A stretch of 60,050 nt of DNA from NCBI RefSeq assembly GCF_001194135.2, contig NC_068983.1, positions 32,827,688-32,887,737 on the forward strand, read 5' to 3'. Below, one piece after another: positions 11,725 to 60,050 of this stretch; position 1 is the first letter of the stretch; every line of letters starts with the position of its first letter. The notes beneath the pieces were generated by a model that saw nothing but the letters and a program-made list of their open reading frames with translations, did no database searches and was not told the origin of the DNA. Made by a program: the position numbers and the translations under genes. This DNA is from Octopus bimaculoides. Its lineage: Eukaryota.

Positions 11725-12111
11725 GAGGGAGATATGTAATTTAATTTCACACGTGATTTTCTCGGACTAGACTTTTCTTTCTCTCCGGACCTTTTCTCTT
11801 TCGTATACATTATATCATATTGGCTATGTATGTAAATGAATATATGTGTGTGAGTGTGTTTGTGTGTGTGTATGTATGTGTGTGTGCATGAGTGTGTGTG
11901 TGTCTTTCTTTTGCTATATATATATATATATATATATATACGTATGTATGTATTAGAGGAAAAAGGACTGCAAAACCAAAGCAAGACGAGCGAGCATCTC
12001 AAGTCATTTAGAATATTTAATTTGGGTAAAGTGAATTTGAAGTAATTAATTAACTAATCAATTGGGTAATTAATTAAGTATTTATCTGTTTGTCTTACAT
12101 CTGTTTCTCAG

Positions 12112-12170
12112 ATATCCCAAGTGATAGTTTAGCATCTTTATATACTAGGTATTCCGTCATCAGAGACAAG
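12112..12170 (+). CDS. Probable small internal coding exon (phase 1 to phase 0), xIPSDSLASLYTRYSVIRDK; likely part of the ALK-like gene
   Basis: Good acceptor (tgtcttacatctgtttctcag) and canonical donor (AAG|gtgagt); 59 nt, open in only one frame. The peptide is not recognisable, so gene assignment is by position and strand only. Confidence 0.55.
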
Positions 12171-29614: not shown

Positions 29615-29774
29615 TATTTTGGCTCTTGGTGCTGAAGGTGGCAGGGCAATAGCTCCACTACACCAGTCACGTGAAGCGAAGCAGTTAGCTCCATATGCAA
29701 TGGCGTACTTTCATTTATCTGAAGGTACAAAACTCAATATCTTGATCGGTCAGAAAGGTCAAGATGCTTGTTCT
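29615..29774 (+). CDS. ALK: Internal exon (phase 2 to phase 0) of an ALK/LTK-like receptor tyrosine kinase, glycine-rich extracellular region
   Basis: Acceptor tcatatcatttcag and donor TCT|gtaagt; 160 nt. Encodes ILALGAEGGRAIAPLHQSREAKQLAPYAMAYFHLSEGTKLNILIGQKGQDACS, which matches ALK/LTK ISGYGAAGG...[23 protein letters not shown]. A non-kinase protein with the same Gly-rich domain cannot be excluded. Confidence 0.8.
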
Positions 29775-30013
29775 GTAAGTAATATTTACGTTGCATTTCT
29801 GCTTTGCTTTTAGTTTGTGTTGATGTGAAATATATATATGTGTTGATGCGTGCGTATGTAGATATATGCGTGCGTATATAGAGATATGTGCGTGCATATA
29901 TGGATATATGCGTGCATGCAATAATATACGCAGTTTTAGACGCGTTTTGTCACTGCACAGTAATTTCTCTTTGTTTTTAACAGTCATTTTTTACAGGAAT
30001 TTTTAATTGGCCA

Positions 30014-30074
30014 GATAACTGAAGAGATGTTGGCGTGGGCTCCCACCCTAGCATCCGAAACTCGGAGTTTTATC
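30014..30074 (+). ncRNA. Near-intact type I hammerhead ribozyme motif, sense to the host gene
   Basis: Stem I GAUAA/UUAUC, core CUGAAGA (30019-30025), long stem II with one bulged C, GAAA (30057-30060), stem III ACUC/GAGU with a 1-nt loop, triplet GUU (30067-30069). Confidence 0.75.
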
Positions 30075-30108
30075 ATGATTACTGAATAAGTGTCACATAT
30101 GTTTACAG

Positions 30109-30141
<33 letters not shown>

Positions 30142-30571
30142 NNNNNNNNNNNNNNNNNNNNNNNNNNNNNNNNNNNNNNNNNNNNNNNNNNNNNNNNNNN
30201 NNNNNNNNNNNNNNNNNNNNNNNNNNNNNNNNNNNNNNNNNNNNNNNNNNNNNNNNNNNNNNNNNNNNNNNNNNNNNNNNNNNNNNNNNNNNNNNNNNNN
30301 NNNNNNNNNNNNNNNNNNNNNNNNNNNNNNNNNNNNNNNNNNNNNNNNNNNNNNNNNNNNNNNNNNNNNNNNNNNNNNNNNNNNNNNNNNNNNNNNNNNN
30401 NNNNNNNNNNNNNNNNNNNNNNNNNNNNNNNNNNNNNNNNNNNNNNNNNNNNNNNNNNNNNNNNNNNNNNNNNNNNNNNNNNNNNNNNNNNNNNNNNNNN
30501 NNNNNNNNNNNNNNNNNNNNNNNNNNNNNNNNNNNNNNNNNNNNNNNNNNNNNNNNNNNNNNNNNNNNNNN

Positions 30572-30608
<37 letters not shown>

Positions 30609-32624
30609 AAGAATGTATGTTTGCTTATGTGACAGTCAATGTGTCTGCGCATGTGCGGACAAAGAAGTGATCAGCATTTTAATACATGGTAATTATTTTC
30701 CCTGCATGTCGTACCACTTAAATTAAATACCATGGGGCTACAATGTGCATTCGTTGATGGAAGATGAAGCAGAAAGTAATCAGATAAAATGCTCCCGGGG
30801 CTGATGACAGCGTTTAATATCATAAATGCTGTTCTGTGAAAGGACTGCTTGTGACAACAAAAACCGAACAAGGACGCTTAATTTTTCTAGATGCATAATA
30901 ACTGAAATAACAGTGTCAAGATATCTAAGTATACATTGCGACAATCATGTAGGAGAACAATATGACATAATGGTCTAATGAAAATGACACATTTGCCGTC
31001 GAAAAAATATTATGAAAAGCTGAAGAAATTAATTGTATTTGTTATCATATTATTTCATTAAATGAGATGTCAAAATGAGACAATGCAAAAGAAAAAAAAA
31101 AAGCAATAGATAAAGGAAAATATTATGCATAAATGTCACAGTACTTCATGTTGAACTATCTGTACGCAAAATGCCATCAAGCATTTTGGAATCTATCTTC
31201 ACTAAAATAATCTAATGAGGTAGATGGAAGCCCGTAACAAATTCCACAGTTTTTTAATACGTAAACAAATGTGAAGTGGAGCTAGTTTTGTCAATTCTTT
31301 CCTCTCATTTCCATTGACATTTTCATAATTAAACATTAATCGAGCACAAGAAGGATTTTTACTTGAACAGTTTATGAATGAAACAATATGAAACTAGGTA
31401 ATCTGGCTTACAACATTTCACTTTCTACCATTCCACTCTCATTCAGATAATAGTTTCAGATTTCGAGACACGGCCAGTAGATTTAGGAGGATGGGTTATT
31501 CGTATATATCAGTCTGGTACTTGTTTTTGTTGAACTTGAAAGAGGGAAGGCAAAGTTGATTCTGAACTCAGAACGTAAAGAGGACCCCCCCCCACTCAAA
31601 AAACACTAAAGATTTTGTTCGACGCGCTCACAGTTTTCCCAGACCTCTGTTTATTCTCCTTAGGATAATGATAAACGTTTCCTTTCACGTGGGGTAGGAA
31701 AGTCTAGATTGAATCGTAGGAAAGTCTAGATTTAATCGTATTCTGTGTATGACTAATAATTATCCATTGCCAGGGGAATCAACGACAAATTCAACCACGG
31801 TTGGGATTCGGAAGCGAAACTATGACAGATGGCACTACACTTCATACTATAAAGCATTTATATGGCCGTTAGCGAAGAGAAATACTTACAAACATATAAA
31901 TAGATAGATAGGAGGAGATTTTGTATGTTACGTTGCTAATTGAAGTTTCTTATTTAACATATTCCGTAGAGGAACAGGAAAATGTTCTGAGTTGTAACCC
32001 AAGAAGTACCAACAGTATAAGTTATTGTACTCTACACTGTATTGGGTACCTTTTCTCTCCTTCCTAAACAAAGACTTGCTTCTGCCCATTCATACCTTTT
32101 CCTCCATCTGTTCAAATATTTCAGCATTCAATAAGTTACTTTCTGAATCAGGTATCAGATTACAGATTAACACGTAACAAAATAATTCCATGTACATAGG
32201 AATGCATATATGTATGTACCTATAGACACGTATGCATACATATAGCCATATATATACCTACACACAAATATGCATATGTACATGCATATATTAATCATAC
32301 AACGATATATACACATATATTTACATATATATCCATATATACATGTACGTACATGCACGCACACACATATGTACACTCACTTAAATATGTATGGGTTATA
32401 CATATATATGGGCATACAACATAAATACACACAGTCTAATATAAATGCAAACACAACTGCCTATTCAATAAACAAATTTAAACATACATACACAAGCAGA
32501 TATGGATACATACATTATATATATATATATATATATAATGATCTTCAATGTCAATACTATGTCTACATAAAGGTGTTGGAGAAATTTGAGTTCATGGGTA
32601 GTCCGAATTCCCAACGTCTTTCAA

Positions 32625-32790
32625 CAACACCTACACCTTCCAGCAAGACTTTGTACAGTCTCATAGGACACTAACAGCCCAAGCATGGATGTGTACCAAA
32701 CTTCATGATCACTTTTTCTTAGATACCTGCCCTTCTATCTCACCAGTCCTCAGTTACGTATGGACTATTACGTAAGGGAGTTAGCTGAGA
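32625..32790 (+). mobile_element. Tc1/maT-like transposase relic
   Basis: YTFQQDFVQSHRTLTAQAWMCTKLHDH...DYYV resembles FQQD.AP.H....TQ.W.....W...SPDLNPLDYYVW. Confidence 0.55.
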
Positions 32791-33501
32791 GAGAGGGCAA
32801 TCAACACACTCATGATAGCATATAATCTGACGAAACAACCATCGAATATGTTTGATAATAGGATCTTCAAAATTATTTGTACTAATTTGTTTCGAAATAC
32901 AGGTCATTTTGATGAGATATGCGTCTTTTTTTAAAAATTCATTCCTATAAATGACCTCAAAAAACATGCATCCTGTATAAGAAACAGATAAAATCCAACA
33001 TTACACTTGATAGCTAAATGCTTGTTAGTATATTATTATATTAATAATGTAAATATATTTAATGAAGTGTAGGAAAAATAATCTTTAATTATCAATCAAT
33101 TAAAATTATGGCCACCTCTGAGAAGGAAAGCTTTATCATTAACGAGCGACTATACAAGTGTAACATCGAGAAACGAGAATGATATTGCCAACTGTATTTC
33201 AAGCCTTCATTAGCATAGAATGAGTCAATGTATAGTACTGTACAAGACGCATTTAAATATTTCACTTGCAACATAGAAAGGCATTTACTCTTTTTTAAAG
33301 CGTTTTAAGGTTGATTCAATGACATATTTCTGGGTTCAAATCAAAGCAATGTTAACTTTACGCTGCAGCACCCAAGGACTTTGATCAATGGAATCCATGT
33401 AAAATATCTGTTTCAATTCCCTACGTTGCTTCCCGTCCTCCACCTGTACTTGTAAGGTATATCCTGTTGAAACACAAACCCAGGTTATTATATCATTTCT
33501 T

Positions 33502-33720
33502 AAGGCGACGAGCTGGCAGAATCGTTAGTACGCTAGACGAAATGCTTAGCGATATTTCGCCTGTCGTTACGTTCTGAGTTCAAATTCAACCGAGGTCTAC
33601 TTTGCCTTTCATCCAATCGGGGTCAATAAATTAAGTACCAGTAAAACACTGGGGTCAATGTAATTGACTAGTCCCCTCCGCACCAAATTTCAGGCCTTGT
33701 GCCTTCACTAGAAAGGATTA
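33502..33720 (+). mobile_element. tRNA-headed SINE family B, near full length
   Basis: AAGGCGACGAGCTGGCAGAATCGTTAG...GTTCTGAGTTCAAATTC...CTTTGCCTTTCATCC...TAAGTACCAG...GAAAGGATTA. Homologous copies at 50232-50445, 56124-56338, 57331-57463 and a diverged one near 31465-31645. Confidence 0.9.
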
Positions 33721-34221
33721 TAAAATTTCCTCCCTCATGAAAGAAGAGAAGCGATATACGTCTCACATCTCATTGTTGCTCGTATTTTATTCCGATGGTT
33801 TTCACAGAGTGAAATACACGAACTACACACACACACGCTCTCTTTCTCTCTCTCTCTTTCTCTCTCTCTCTTTCTCTCTCTCTCTCTCCCTCTTTGTGTC
33901 TTTAATGTTGCTCTACATTTCGCTGTAACAAACGAAGAATCATTTTATAAATTCTGTATCGATTGTTCCAACTATCCCGAAGGGAGACTATAGATATGAA
34001 GCAGAAAAGGAGGAAAATATTTTCCTATCTATATGTATGAACACACACACACACACACACACGCATATATATATATATATATATATATATCTTACACATA
34101 AACACACATGTATGTATATTAGATAAATGACGTGTGTATTATAATGTAGTTGCATTCTATATTTCATGTATATAGATACATACAGGTGTGTGTATTTGTT
34201 TGTTTGTTTGTATGCGTGTGT

Positions 34222-34261
<40 letters not shown>

Positions 34262-34747
34262 TTCATTCAGGCTAATACCTTTGATATATATTTTTAATGA
34301 AAATTTGTGATGAAATTTTATCTATTTGTATTTGAAATTCATTGTCTAGTATACTTACTATTTTTAAAACGAAGTGTATTTGAATATTTTAGAATTTGAC
34401 ACAATACAACACAATATAAATTGTGTTGTATCATTCTTTCTAGTTTTTCTGTGTGAAATGTTTAAATTGTCCTTTATTCAATGACTGTTGCAAAAGTGCT
34501 CTGTTCTGATATCATTAACTATTTTGGGTGCCGCATATGTACTATATTTTCGTATGTAGGTGCAAACTCAATAAAATCCTTTCATACGCTTCCTGTTATT
34601 CCTATCTTCTCGTTCACCTATATACCTTTATGTGTTTAATAATTTTTTTCGCTTATTTTTTTCATTTATTTTCACTCATTTTTCCATTGATCTTCATTAT
34701 ATATATTTCATTTTCTCTGAAATATATATATATATATATGTATATAT

Positions 34748-34824
<77 letters not shown>

Positions 34825-35694
34825 AACAAATNNNNNNNNNNNNNNNNNNNNNNNNNNNNNNNNNNNNNNNNNNNNNNNNNNNNNNNNNNNNNNNNNNNNN
34901 NNNNNNNNNNNNNNNNNNNNNNNNNNNNNNNNNNNNNNNNNNNNNNNNNNNNNNNNNNNNNNNNNNNNNNNNNNNNNNNNNNNNNNNNNNNNNNNNNNNN
35001 NNNNNNNNNNNNNNNNNNNNNNNNNNNNNNNNNNNNNNNNNNNNNNNNNNNNNNNNNNNNNNNNNNNNNNNNNNNNNNNNNNNNNNNNNNNNNNNNNNNN
35101 NNNNNNNNNNNNNNNNNNNNNNNNNNNNNNNNNNNNNNNNNNNNNNNNNNNNNNNNNNNNNNNNNNNGTGTGTTTGCTCGGCGATAGCCAAGGAAGAAAA
35201 GGATTATTGACCGGAAGCATGTGACCATGCCGGTGTAAGGAGAAGAGAGAGAGAGAATGATAGAGGGAGAAACAAAGGGAGGAAGTAGAAGAATAGGTGA
35301 GCAACGAGAGGAAAAGAGGAAGAGAGGAAGTACGAGGGGGGAAAAGGAGATACGTAGTAGTAACAGGAAGAACGAGAGGGGTAAAGAGAGATACGTAGTA
35401 GTAAACAGAGGAAGAACGAGAGGGGGAAAATTGAAGAGGAAGAGAAAGAGATAGAGTAGCGTCGGAAAATATAAAGTTGCGAAAACTACTTACAGATTGG
35501 TGACGCTGCGTTCGGTCGCGTGTGTTTGTGCGTGCGCGCACGTATGTGTGTGTCTATGTATGTATATATGTATGTATGGAGAGGAGTATATTCCTACGGT
35601 GGAAAAATGTAGGTGAATGCGTTTTGGGAGTTTTAAAATGCACCTAAATCTCAAAACGTGCATTGGTTTTCAAATTTTGTAATACATTTATTCA

Positions 35695-38700: not shown

Positions 38701-39293
38701 TCAGTGAGCAAGGAACGATCTCTTATTCCCTCCCTTTGATTGGTGTATTTGATGTGTATTCTTTGTTGTTTGCTTTAAATTAAACACTTAGATGAAGAAG
38801 TTTTAGGTATCGACACCTTGAGAATATGATATATCACAAATCATCAATACTTCATTTTACATTTCCTTTGGGAACAAAACTTTGTTTAACGAAGCTTCAT
38901 TTTGAGAGATAATTAGCTGTAAAGATTGCAAAAATATTTCTTTTTCATTATTTTTTCACCCCTGAATTTCTCACTTAAATTGAACATCTTTATATGGAAT
39001 CATTTTCGAACATAAGAAAACAATCAATAAGTCACACATGTTTTTTTTTCGTGTCCTGGAGTATTTACTCATGATATATACTATCATCTCTGGCAACTTT
39101 TAGAAATTTAAAAAAATTATGATAAACTGAAAAAAAAAAAAAAACAATTCTTTAATCTTGTTGTCCTATCATGACATGTCAGCGTAATGCAATATCATTA
39201 TATGCCAAACTAAAGATTATAAAAGTAATAAAAGAAAAACGTTGCTGTGAAATCATTTTGGTCTGCATTGTCAAATTTGAAAACTATAATGAA

Positions 39294-56123: not shown

Positions 56124-56338
56124 AAGGCGGTGAGCTAGGAGAATCGTTAGCACGCAGGAGAAAATGTCTTGCAACATTTCGATCATCTCTACCTCCTGAG
56201 TTCAAATTCCGCCGAGGTTGATTTTGCCAGTCATCCTTTCGGGGTCGATAAAATAATTTGCAGTCAAGTCCTAGGTCGATGTAATCGGCTAGCCCCATCA
56301 CCCAAAACTGCATGCTCTGTGCCTGTAGCAGTAAATAA
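56124..56338 (+). mobile_element. SINE family B, diverged
   Basis: AAGGCGGTGAGCTAGGAGAATCGTTAGCACG...GAGTTCAAATTCCGCCGAGG...CATCCTTTCGGGGTCGATAAAAT. Confidence 0.88.
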
Positions 56339-57330: not shown

Positions 57331-57463
57331 TTAATTGGCACAAGGCCAGCAATTTCGTGTGGCGGGGTAAGTCGACTACACGACCAGTGTTAAACTGGTA
57401 CTTATTTTATCGACTCCAAAACGATAAAGGGCAAAGTCGACCTCGGTGGAATTTGAACTCAAA
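57331..57463 (-). mobile_element. SINE family B 3' fragment
   Basis: CTGGTACTTATTTTATCGAC...GGCAAAGTCGACCTCGGTGGAATTTGAACTC. Confidence 0.85.
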
Positions 57464-57469
57464 TCCTAT

Positions 57470-58725
57470 ATGGATTTTATCGTTGATTATTATAATAATA
57501 ATAAATATGAATTCACTAAAATCAATTTATTCGCTGCTGAATTATTTTGGTTATTCACACGTGCCTGAGATGAGCCATCTGCATTTAAACTGTATATACG
57601 TGTGAGCATTTATGGATGCATTAGGGATACGTATGTGTTCGTATGATAAGTATAATTGTTTATAATTATATACATTCAGTTATGTCATACTGATGACGGT
57701 AAAGGAACTTATATTCCTGAACTAGAAATCAATTGATCGATGGGTAAACATTAAAAAAAAATCTTCTTTGTTCATTTCCATCGCTTTCAGCTCGTGTCTT
57801 TGTGATAAGTAAGGCAGTTTTAGAGTCATTTGACATTTGACAGAGTATATAATATTTTATAATAATTATAATAAAGGCGACTACATAGTAGTGCCACACG
57901 CTAAAAGAAAATGTCAAATGACTATAAAACTACTTTATTTATCACACTAACACGGGCTAAAAGCGAGGGAAATGAACAAAAAAGATTTAAAAAAAAGTTT
58001 AATCAATTGATTTCTAGTTCAGGGATATACCTTGCTTTACCGCCATCAGTATGACATAACGTACATAATTATAAACATTTATACATACCATACAAGCACA
58101 ACGTATCCCCAGTGCATCTACAAATGTTCATATTTATATACATAGTTTATATCTAGATCGTTAATCACAGCCACGTGTGAATAATCAAAAGAATTCAGCA
58201 GTGAATACATTAATTTAAGTGAATTCATATTTCTTATTATAATCAAGGATAAAATTTGTATAGGATTTTATCAGGTAGCTAGCAATGTAAAATATTTTAG
58301 GAATAAATTAATACAGAGTAAATCATTTTTTATAATAATTATAATAAGGTCAACTACATAGTAGTACCACACGCATGAAGAACATGTCAAAAATAACTCT
58401 CAGATTTACCTTATTTATCACATAGACACGGGCTGAAAGCGAGGGAAATGAGCAAAAAAGATCTTTTTAAAAAATTTAGCCATATTTCAATTCATTTCTA
58501 GTTCAGCGATGTAACTTCCTTTACCGTCATCAGTATGACATAACTCAACGTATATAATTATAAACATTTATACATTTGACATCTTCTAGCGTGTGGCACT
58601 TCTATGTAGTTGCCTTCATTATAATTGTTACAAAAAAATATATACTCTGTATTAATTTATACTTAAAAGGTTTTACATGCTAGTTACCTGATAAAATCCT
58701 ATATAGATTTTATCCTTGATTATAA
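57470..58725. repeat. Complex array of a ~480-bp unit in mixed orientation, with one hammerhead-like motif per unit
   Basis: ~57480-57840 is the reverse complement of ~57905-58240; ~58325-58575 directly repeats ~57850-58085; ~58577-58725 is the reverse complement of ~58233-58390. HHR-like motifs lie at 57684-57744 (+), ~57995-58055 (-) and 58479-58539 (-). Confidence 0.88.
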
Positions 58726-59395: not shown

Positions 59396-60050
59396 NNNNN
59401 NNNNNNNNNNNNNNNNNNNNNNNNNNNNNNNNNNNNNNNNNNNNNNNNNNNNNNNNNNNNNNNNNNNNNNNNNNNNNNNNNNNNNNNNNNNNNNNNNNNN
59501 NNNNNNNNNNNNNNNNNNNNNNNNNNNNNNNNNNNNNNNNNNNNNNNNNNNNNNNNNNNNNNNNNNNNNNNNNNNNNNNNNNNNNNNNNNNNNNNNNNNN
59601 NNNNNNNNNNNNNNNNNNNNNNNNNNNNNNNNNNNNNNNNNNNNNNNNNNNNNNNNNNNNNNNNNNNNNNNNNNNNNNNNNNNNNNNNNNNNNNNNNNNN
59701 NNNNNNNNNNNNNNNNNNNNNNNNNNNNNNNNNNNNNNNNNNNNNNNNNNNNNNNNNNNNNNNNNNNNNNNNNNNNNNNNNNNNNNNNNNNTATATATAT
59801 ATATATGTATGGGTGAATTTACGAAAAAAAAACAACGGACGAAGACAGGTGGTGTAAGTAATCACACACACACATATATTTCGTATGTGTATTTCGTGTA
59901 TTTCATACCAAACAGTTTTGAAACAACGCCAAAACAACGCCAGATCATACATTCAAAATAAATGGAAGTGGAGAGACAAGTCACTGAAGAGATTGCAAGA
60001 GTGCAATGAAATAATTTAACAAAAAACTATATAAATTAATAAAGGACTGA

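What the first reader, a model, noticed from the sequence alone, without database searches (positions are those of the whole stretch)
30014..30074. Near-intact hammerhead in sense orientation 240 nt downstream of the ALK exon donor
Seen: all core nucleotides are present, with stem I 5 bp, stem II 8+4 bp plus one bulged C, stem III ACUC/GAGU and predicted cleavage after 30069. It is the best-preserved motif in the window and would be in the pre-mRNA. Established: conserved intronic HHRs exist in amniotes (RECK HH9, C10orf118 HH10); a 1-nt stem III loop normally needs dimerisation. Inference: most likely a young PLE terminal repeat, but if a partner copy lies in the adjacent gap (30142-30571) it could cut the nascent ALK transcript co-transcriptionally.
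Basis: partly seen in the sequence, partly recalled or inferred. Interest (0 to 1): 0.72.

Follow-up and report, generated by a model that had tools for sequence, protein, structure and literature searches.

The report
Solitary transposon-type hammerhead motif in intron
A complete-looking hammerhead ribozyme motif does sit in the intron just after an ALK/LTK-like exon, but it looks like an ordinary stranded leftover of a Penelope-like retrotransposon and is predicted to cut poorly, if at all, so it is unlikely to matter for the gene.

Summary
Window 30014-30074 (+) carries every conserved hammerhead core nucleotide in type I topology. Helix I has 5 bp. Helix II has 8 bp, a C·C mismatch and 4 more bp, with one unpaired C at its base. 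Helix III is ACUC-G-GAGU, H17 is U30069, and the motif lies 239 nt after a GTAAG donor. It is not chance: a descriptor that accepts it hits about 0.4-1.3% of random 56-kb windows, and none of about 1,200 random windows or 400,000 planted cores matched it in quality. It is not a database-grade hammerhead. Rfam Hammerhead_1 is the top full-length match but scores 13.3 bits against a cut-off of 34. The architecture (long helix II, short open helix I, no loop-loop contacts, ATG at the start of helix II, adjacent (TA)n tract and assembly gap) fits the minimal hammerheads of Penelope-like elements and their retrozyme derivatives. Those occur mostly as solitary copies and barely cleave alone. I found no second copy, no tandem unit, and no Penelope-like coding sequence in the 4.3 kb past the gap. 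A competing hairpin hides G12-A14 and the cleavage site. Verdict: a solo retroelement relic, probably inactive as a monomer. "Young" and "cuts ALK pre-mRNA" are unsupported. Copy number and conservation could not be tested here.

The parts
30014..30018 (+). Helix I, 5' strand (GAUAA)
   Evidence: Pairs with 30070-30074. Rfam aligns it to the Hammerhead_1 helix I.
30019..30025 (+). Core box C3 U4 G5 A6 A7 G8 A9 (CUGAAGA)
   Evidence: Direct reading. Aligned to the Rfam consensus CUGAnGA.
30026..30056 (+). Helix II hairpin: 8 bp (two of them G·U), a C·C mismatch, 4 bp and the loop GCUC, with one unpaired C (30055 or 30056) at the junction with G12
   Evidence: MFE and centroid folds. Pair probabilities are 0.79-1.0. 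The descriptor calls it 'bulge3@0'.
30057..30059 (+). Core G12 A13 A14
   Evidence: Direct reading; Rfam alignment CGAAAC.
30060..30068 (+). Helix III ACUC-G-GAGU (A15.1-U16.1 plus 2-3 more pairs), a near-palindrome with a central G
   Evidence: Pair probability is only 0.3-0.5 in short context and 0.02 in 181 nt.
30069..30069 (+). H17 = U; predicted cleavage between 30069 and 30070
   Evidence: Position follows from the core numbering. Cleavage was not tested.
30070..30074 (+). Helix I, 3' strand (UUAUC)
30027..30089 (+). Short ORF (MLAWAPTLASETRSFIMITE*) whose ATG lies at the start of helix II
   Evidence: Direct reading. The anole Poseidon PLE also starts its ORF at the start of stem II (PMC11167929). 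No protein relative was found.
30057..30071 (+). Competing hairpin G57·U71, A58-U70, A59-U69, A60-U68, C61-G67, U62-A66, which sequesters G12-A14, H17 and the start of helix I
   Evidence: The MFE of the 61-mer is -17.6 kcal/mol against -13.7 for the hammerhead fold. The same pairing dominates the predicted dimer.
29615..29774 (+). Upstream exon encoding an ALK/LTK glycine-rich-domain segment (...LNILIGQKGQDACS); the donor GTAAGT starts at 29775
   Evidence: PDB search: LTK E=0.034, and seven of the eight weaker matches (E 0.6-1) are ALK entries at the homologous position. tblastn with a human ALK sequence recalled from memory gave E=0.003 (a lead only). Splice sites were read.
30109..30604 (.). 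(AT)16.5, a 430-N assembly gap (30142-30571) and (TA)16.5: a microsatellite that broke the assembly and is the likely insertion target
   Evidence: TRF and the N-run list. PLEs prefer microsatellite targets such as (TA)n and often break short-read assemblies (PMC8557442).

Best explanation
The motif is a solitary type I hammerhead left by a retroelement. Most likely it is the terminal (pseudo-LTR / ORF-start) piece of a 5'-truncated Penelope-like element, or of a retrozyme derived from one. It inserted into TA-rich simple sequence in a large intron of an ALK/LTK-like gene, in the sense orientation. In the parent element such hammerheads are thought to process tandem or multimeric element transcripts, working as dimers through an extended helix III. 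Here the copy is stranded alone inside the pre-mRNA. As a monomer it is predicted to be weak or inactive for five reasons. It has no loop1-loop2 tertiary contacts. An extra C sits beside G12. Helix I is short and A/U-rich. The cleavage triplet is GUU. A more stable alternative hairpin pairs GAAAC with GUUUU. The intron should therefore be spliced normally, and the motif should have no role in the gene. Shown: the motif, its non-random quality, its solitude in the window and the competing fold. Inferred: the retroelement origin and the lack of activity.
For: All core nucleotides and three helices are present in type I order. The motif is far better than chance: 0 of 1,200 random windows and 0 of 400,000 planted cores reach its quality. 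Several features match the metazoan PLE minimal hammerheads (PMC4209133): helix II of 8 or more bp, helix I of 5 bp with no defined loop 1, a possible G10.1-C11.1 pair, and a near-palindromic helix III. That paper also reports that most such motifs occur as single elements from truncated PLEs. The ATG lies at the start of helix II, as in the anole Poseidon element (PMC11167929). The motif is a roughly 95-nt island of about 55% GC between a T-rich 13-mer repeat and (AT)n plus an assembly gap, and PLEs target microsatellites and break short-read assemblies (PMC8557442). Penelope families are annotated in Octopus vulgaris (PMC13282606), and 235 Hammerhead_1 loci were reported in the giant squid genome (PMC6962438). 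About 44% of Xenopus retrozyme copies overlap introns, so an intronic copy is commonplace (bioRxiv 10.64898/2026.07.22.740005). On activity, a solitary PLE hammerhead showed no cleavage in vitro and dimers cleaved weakly. The hammerhead fold is 3.9 kcal/mol worse than the competing hairpin, and helices I and III have a probability of about 0 in 181-nt context.
Against: No related copy exists in the window. No PLE RT or GIY-YIG coding remnant was found in the three sense frames of the 4.3 kb past the gap (Pfam). A motif search of the whole window also found no PLE coding remnant. The family-level evidence that would prove a transposon origin could not be obtained, because no cephalopod genome or repeat library is reachable with these tools. 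One hallmark of PLE minimal hammerheads, the extra nucleotide between A9 and G10.1, is absent; here the extra nucleotide is on the opposite strand. The Rfam score is well below the cut-off. Nearest-neighbour folding ignores the hammerhead's tertiary core, so the inactivity call is a prediction. I did not verify the organism.
Confidence: 0.75

Rival explanations
1. The visible motif is one half of a larger or tandem element (a retrozyme dimer, or a PLE with a second pseudo-LTR) whose partner hammerhead lies in the 430-N gap. The two would form an active dimer and cut the nascent transcript.
For: Helix III is a near-palindrome suited to pairing in trans. PLE insertions are often tandem or inverted and cause assembly gaps (PMC8557442). 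Retrozyme units are 150-450 bp and would fit in the gap (PMC7229834).
Against: Both gap edges are pure (TA)n of equal length, the usual sign of an unresolved microsatellite. Nothing to the right of the gap resembles the left flank on either strand. No PLE ORF follows the gap. Even dimeric PLE hammerheads cleaved poorly in vitro. The predicted dimer pairs G12-A14 with U69-U71 rather than leaving the core free.
Confidence: 0.1
2. The motif is a chance hammerhead-like arrangement built around an unrelated GC-rich hairpin.
For: Rfam scores only 13.3 bits, E=0.86. The minimal descriptor is expected about 190 times (up to about 600 with the window rates) by chance in a 2.7-Gb genome. CUGANGA...GAAA strings are over-represented in this window for unrelated reasons (17 against 4.2 expected). 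The fold z-score is only -1.39. A first-stage scan of many windows can select rare chance events.
Against: Nothing of this quality (I>=5, II>=8, III>=3, full core) appeared in 1,200 random windows or 400,000 planted cores, which puts the rate below about 5e-5 per window. My analytic estimate is a few per genome. Real PLE or retrozyme hammerheads number from hundreds to thousands per invertebrate genome.
Confidence: 0.06
3. The motif is an exapted, conserved intronic ribozyme that regulates ALK/LTK pre-mRNA processing, analogous to the amniote HH9 and HH10 hammerheads.
For: It lies in the sense orientation close to a donor site with an intact core. Conserved intronic hammerheads do exist in amniotes (cited in PMC7229834).
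Against: It does not match the HH9 or HH10 models. It has no tertiary-contact loops and is predicted to misfold. It has minimal PLE-type architecture rather than the canonical one. It sits in simple-sequence surroundings typical of neutral intron DNA.
Confidence: 0.03

Closest known systems
Minimal type I hammerheads of metazoan Penelope-like elements (Cervera & de la Pena 2014, PMC4209133)
   Same: Both are type I with a full core. Both have a long helix II (8 or more bp), a short open helix I (5 bp) and no loop-loop contacts. Both have a small, near-palindromic helix III that implies dimer action. Both occur mostly as solitary copies. Here the ATG at the start of helix II also matches the Poseidon element of Anolis (PMC11167929).
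   Different: The unpaired nucleotide lies on the 3' strand of helix II next to G12, not between A9 and G10.1. Helix II is extended to about 12 bp with a C·C mismatch. Helix III is longer (3-4 bp) than in the strict minimal form. No PLE ORF or second pseudo-LTR is nearby.
Non-LTR retrozymes of invertebrates (Cervera & de la Pena 2020, PMC7229834) and their proposed PLE origin (bioRxiv 10.64898/2026.07.22.740005)
   Same: Both carry a type I hammerhead in a short AT-rich unit. Monomer copies are dispersed through the genome, introns included.
   Different: No tandem repeat is visible here. Retrozyme hammerheads usually have a 6-bp helix I, a 4-bp helix II and loops that make tertiary contacts, and they cleave efficiently.
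Rfam Hammerhead_1 (RF00163)
   Same: It is the top-scoring family, aligned over the full model with the same core and helix order.
   Different: The score is 13.3 bits against a gathering threshold of 34. The helix II insert is 29 nt against 12 in the consensus, and H17 is U instead of C.
Conserved intronic hammerheads of amniotes (HH9 in RECK, HH10 in C10orf118)
   Same: Both are intronic, in the sense orientation and part of a pre-mRNA.
   Different: There is no match to those Rfam families and no evidence of conservation. This motif has minimal rather than canonical architecture.

Membership tests
Hammerhead ribozyme, type I | Conserved core: C3 U4 G5 A6 N7 G8 A9, G12 A13 A14, the A15.1-U16.1 pair, and H17 not G | tested here: met
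   30019-30025 is CUGAAGA; 30057-30059 is GAA; A30060 pairs with U30068; H17 is U30069.
Hammerhead ribozyme, type I | Three helices around the core, with helix I open and helices II and III capped | tested here: met
   Helix I has 5 bp, helix II 12 bp and helix III 3-4 bp.
Hammerhead ribozyme, type I | Helix II abuts the core directly (10.1-11.1 pair next to A9 and G12, no extra nucleotide on the 3' side) | tested here: inconclusive
   Either G26-C56 pairs with C55 bulged (-10.3 kcal/mol), or G26-C55 pairs with C56 inserted next to G12 (-13.7 kcal/mol). The effect on catalysis is unknown.
Hammerhead ribozyme, type I | Score at or above the Rfam RF00163 gathering threshold | tested here: not met
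   13.3 bits against 34, E=0.86 on 73 nt. No hit in the wider scans.
Hammerhead ribozyme, type I | Loop 1 / loop 2 tertiary contacts of canonical natural hammerheads | tested here: not met
   There is no loop or bulge in the 5-bp helix I. Helix II is about 12 bp, so loop 2 lies far from helix I. The canonical form has a 6-bp helix I and a 4-bp helix II (PMC4209133).
Hammerhead ribozyme, type I | Site-specific self-cleavage after H17 | not testable with these tools
   Needs an in vitro transcription assay or mapping of RNA ends.
PLE minimal hammerhead | Long helix II (7-8 bp) and short helix I (4-5 bp) | tested here: met
   8 bp (plus 4 more) and 5 bp, compared with PMC4209133.
PLE minimal hammerhead | [quoted passage not shown] | tested here: not met
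   G26 follows A25 directly and pairs. The unpaired C is on the other strand. The feature is listed in PMC4209133.
PLE minimal hammerhead | Conserved G10.1-C11.1 pair | tested here: inconclusive
   It is possible as G26-C56, but the fold model prefers G26-C55 (probability 0.79 against 0.007).
PLE minimal hammerhead | Palindromic 15.2-16.2 / loop 3, allowing a dimeric helix III | tested here: inconclusive
   ACUC-G-GAGU is a palindrome except for the central G, which would form a G·G mismatch in the dimer.
PLE minimal hammerhead | Located in a pseudo-LTR flanking an RT plus GIY-YIG ORF | tested here: not met
   No Pfam family in the three sense frames of 30572-34831. No PLE-type YxDD or GIY-YIG motif anywhere in the window. 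This fits a solo truncated copy but gives no positive proof.
PLE minimal hammerhead | Belongs to a multi-copy consensus family in the same genome | not testable with these tools
   There is no other copy in the 60-kb window, and no cephalopod genome or repeat library is available.
Non-LTR retrozyme | Head-to-tail tandem units of 150-450 bp, each with a hammerhead | tested here: not met
   No similarity between the two sides of the gap or elsewhere in the window. TRF finds only simple repeats. The content of the gap is unknown.
Conserved intronic hammerheads (HH9/HH10) | Match to the Rfam HH9 or HH10 model | tested here: not met
   Neither family was reported, even at E<=10.
Conserved intronic hammerheads (HH9/HH10) | Conservation at the orthologous intron across species | not testable with these tools
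   No related genomes are reachable.

The most novel reading that the evidence does not exclude
The motif is not a dead relic. It is a hammerhead retained in the first few hundred nucleotides of an ALK/LTK intron across octopods. On this reading it cleaves slowly, or in trans-dimer with transcripts of sister copies, and so tunes receptor tyrosine kinase pre-mRNA output. It would be an invertebrate counterpart of the amniote intronic HH9 and HH10 ribozymes.
Probability: 0.03. Interest if true: 0.7.

Novelty: new member of a known kind. Interest (0 to 1): 0.15.

Why it matters
As it stands the finding matters little. Solitary Penelope-type hammerheads are known to litter invertebrate genomes, and this is one more copy that happens to lie in a gene. 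It is a useful caution that a complete core and tidy stems do not make an active ribozyme: the extra C, the missing tertiary contacts and the competing hairpin all argue against activity. It would become interesting only if the motif proved conserved in the orthologous intron of other cephalopods or was shown to cleave in vivo. That would extend gene-embedded hammerheads beyond amniotes.

Tried and rejected
1. Rfam at gathering level on the whole window, and at E<=10 on 242 nt, gave no hammerhead. Only a 73-nt scan exposed the sub-threshold Hammerhead_1 alignment.

2. A search for other copies in the window by blastn (word size 7) found only the (TA)n tail repeated. Repeat finder output was swamped by microsatellites and N runs.

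3. The other 16 CUGANGA...GAAA sites, including 30801-30841, 51587-51614, 59984-60011 and 12090-12169, lack proper helices or have G at H17. None is a hammerhead.

4. A public-collection scan for CTGANGAGATG-N(14-30)-CATCCGAAAC gave 16 metagenome hits and 1 viral hit. I estimate that number is about what chance gives, and 16 of the 17 have no hammerhead architecture; the viral one, L017, passes only the loosest descriptor.

5. Protein searches with the exon ORF and with the peptide read from the helix II ATG found nothing.

6. Pfam on the three sense frames of 30572-34831 gave no family.

7. tblastn with a human ALK sequence recalled from memory found only this one exon in the window.

8. No tRNA-like or SINE promoter lies next to the motif.

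9. The supplements of the PLE and Octopus repeat papers hold no usable sequence libraries.

Full report
**What is there**

On the + strand, GAUAA (30014-30018) pairs with UUAUC (30070-30074) as helix I. CUGAAGA (30019-30025) supplies C3-A9. Positions 30026-30056 form a long hairpin, helix II. GAA (30057-30059) supplies G12-A14. ACUC-G-GAGU (30060-30068) is helix III, starting with the A15.1-U16.1 pair. U30069 is H17, so cleavage would fall between 30069 and 30070.

Helix II has 8 bp, two of them G·U, then a C34xC47 mismatch, 4 G/C-rich bp and a GCUC loop. One C at its base (30055 or 30056) has no partner. The fold model prefers G26-C55, which leaves C56 wedged between helix II and G12 (-13.7 kcal/mol). 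The alternative, G26-C56 with C55 bulged, scores -10.3 kcal/mol.

Helix III can form as 4 bp with an impossible 1-nt loop. It can also form as 3 bp with a CGG triloop, which is feasible in a monomer.

**The gene context**

The neighbouring exon runs from 29615 to 29774, with acceptor ttcAG and donor GTAAGT. Its translation (ILALGAEGGRA...LNILIGQKGQDACS) gives a weak but position-specific match to the glycine-rich domain of LTK (E=0.034). Seven of the eight weaker matches (E 0.6-1) are ALK structures aligned at the same position. The rest of the 60 kb is intron-like.

The motif is therefore in the sense orientation, 239 nt after the donor, as claimed. The ALK/LTK label is probable rather than proven. 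I could not verify the organism.

**Is it more than chance?**

I wrote a descriptor requiring the full core, helix I of at least 4 bp, helix II of at least 4 bp with at most one 1-nt bulge, helix III of at least 3 bp, and H17 not G. In the real window it finds only this site on either strand.

In 1,200 Markov-random windows of the same composition it hit in 0.7-1.3% of windows. It never produced a hit with helix I of at least 5 bp and helix II of at least 8 bp. A conditional simulation with 400,000 planted cores gave 0.004 expected hits per window for the minimal descriptor. That extrapolates to roughly 190 per 2.7-Gb genome. It gave none of the observed quality. By my analytic estimate, chance should yield only a few such motifs in a whole genome of that size.

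The raw string CUGANGA...GAAA is over-represented in the window (17 against 4.2 expected). The other sites are unrelated and fail the structural test.

**Database view**

Rfam reports nothing at gathering thresholds and nothing at E<=10 on 242 nt. On a 73-nt slice, Hammerhead_1 (RF00163) becomes the best hit. It aligns end to end in exactly the register above, but scores only 13.3 bits against a threshold of 34 (E=0.86). Apparent causes of the shortfall include the 29-nt helix II insert (consensus 12 nt), the inserted G in helix III and U instead of C at H17. Neither HH9 nor HH10 is reported.

**What kind of hammerhead?**

Cervera and de la Pena (PMC4209133) describe the hammerheads of metazoan Penelope-like elements (PLEs). 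Their features are:
- type I topology;
- a helix II of 7-8 bp;
- a helix I of 4-5 bp with no defined loop 1;
- a conserved G10.1-C11.1 pair;
- a tiny, palindromic helix III that implies action as a dimer.

They also report that most copies are solitary and probably come from truncated elements. A single motif showed no detectable cleavage in vitro, and dimers cleaved weakly.

The present motif shares the long helix II, the short open helix I, the lack of loop-loop contacts and a near-palindromic helix III. It differs in that its extra nucleotide lies on the opposite strand.

Three contextual points fit a PLE:
1. An ATG (30027-30029) sits at the start of helix II and opens a 20-codon ORF. In the biochemically studied Poseidon element of Anolis, the ORF likewise starts at the start of stem II (PMC11167929).
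2. The motif is a roughly 95-nt island of about 55% GC. It lies between a T-rich 13-mer repeat and an (AT)16.5 tract that runs into a 430-N gap, which ends in (TA)16.5. PLEs favour microsatellite targets such as (TA)n, and their complex insertions often break short-read assemblies (PMC8557442).
3. Penelope families are annotated in Octopus vulgaris (PMC13282606), and 235 Hammerhead_1 loci were reported in the giant squid genome (PMC6962438).

Non-LTR retrozymes are now argued to be non-autonomous PLE derivatives. Their monomers are dispersed, and about 44% of copies overlap introns in Xenopus (bioRxiv 10.64898/2026.07.22.740005). An intronic copy is therefore not unusual.

**What is missing**

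- No second copy of 29940-30095 exists anywhere in the window on either strand, so there is no visible tandem unit or inverted partner.
- The three sense frames of 30572-34831 match no Pfam family at E<=1.
- A motif scan of all six frames of the window found no PLE-type RT or GIY-YIG signature. It found only a LINE-type 'FADDITL' remnant near 43462 on the minus strand.
- I could not reach family-level evidence. Two protein searches found nothing. A pattern scan of the metagenome and viral collections returned 17 chance-like hits with no convincing hammerhead architecture. The relevant papers hold no usable sequence supplements.

The retroelement origin therefore rests on architecture, context and prior abundance, not on demonstrated homology.

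**Would it cut?**

The 61-nt RNA prefers a fold that keeps helix II but pairs G57-A58-A59-A60-C61-U62 with A66-G67-U68-U69-U70-U71 (-17.6 kcal/mol against -13.7 for the hammerhead fold). That pairing hides G12-A14, the scissile site and the start of helix I.

Helices I and III have a probability of about 0.36 in the 61-mer. In a 111-nt context helix I falls to about 0.1 while helix III stays at 0.4-0.5, and in 181 nt of context both are essentially zero. The predicted homodimer uses the same extended GAAACUC/GAGUUUU pairing. The fold z-score is unremarkable (-1.39). Nearest-neighbour models ignore the hammerhead's tertiary core, so this is a prediction and not proof.

Several other features point the same way: the extra C beside G12, the absence of loop-loop contacts and the A/U-rich 5-bp helix I. 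The GUU triplet does too; from my own knowledge of the NUH rule it cleaves less well than GUC. Together with the published inactivity of solitary PLE hammerheads, I expect little or no cleavage of the pre-mRNA.

The partner-in-the-gap idea cannot be excluded, but the matching (TA)n edges suggest an unresolved microsatellite.

**Verdict**

The words 'young' and 'could cut the nascent ALK transcript' are unsupported. This is a new member of a well-known kind, of low interest unless conservation or in vivo cleavage is demonstrated.

Noticed in passing
window 30027-30089 (+): An ATG at the start of helix II opens a 20-codon ORF (MLAWAPTLASETRSFIMITE*). The anole Poseidon PLE also starts its ORF at the start of stem II. 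No protein relative was found.
   Followed up: partly
window 30057-30071 (+): GAAAC/GUUUU complementarity creates a 6-bp hairpin that competes with the hammerhead core. It also dominates the predicted homodimer.
   Followed up: yes
window 29974-30006 (+): A T-rich 13-nt repeat (TTTTTAACAGGAA, 2.5 copies) gives two splice-acceptor-like 'ttttt(a)acag' strings 17-30 nt upstream of helix I. In Drosophila virilis Penelope an intron ends at the 5' end of helix I. This may be coincidence in AT-rich intron DNA.
   Followed up: no
window 30801-30841 (+): CUGAUGA is followed by a 9-bp hairpin, 6 unpaired nt and GAAA, about 730 nt downstream on the same strand. It is not a hammerhead: H17 would be G, there is no helix I, and a 6-nt spacer precedes G12.
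   Followed up: yes
window 13887-14160, 16917-17123, 39292-39529: Three copies (66-91% identical) of a SINE-like repeat. Two of them lie next to a (TTA)n tract.
   Followed up: no
window 57337-57461; also 33575-33703, 56197-56323, 50250-50374, 19987-20089: A dispersed repeat of about 125 nt, 75-79% identical between copies, on both strands. It is probably another SINE or MITE family.
   Followed up: no
window 57461-58268: A large imperfect palindrome (self-inverted, 76% over about 810 nt) with further internal inverted segments. It contains the paired CUGAUGACGGUAAAGGAA... strings at 57690 (+) and 58495 (-).
   Followed up: partly
window 47543-47841 and 47914-48212: A 299-nt direct repeat, 100% identical, spaced 371 nt apart and bordered by N runs (47413-47542 and 47842-47851). 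It looks like an assembly duplication around a gap.
   Followed up: no
window about 43462 (-): A non-LTR (LINE-type) reverse transcriptase remnant, '...DLDFADDITLVS*RITNAQTLLANLKLAAIEV...'. No PLE-type RT or GIY-YIG motif occurs anywhere in the window.
   Followed up: partly
window 22934-23272 (+) and 15065-15487 (+): The first ORF gives weak, sub-threshold Pfam matches to helicase C-terminal domains and resembles a Helitron or PIF1 helicase. The second ORF looks mariner-like by eye but has no significant Pfam hit.
   Followed up: partly
whole window: There are eleven N runs of 10-971 nt, many of them flanked by microsatellites. CUGANGA...GAAA strings are four times over-represented compared with shuffles (17 against 4.2) without being hammerheads.
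   Followed up: partly
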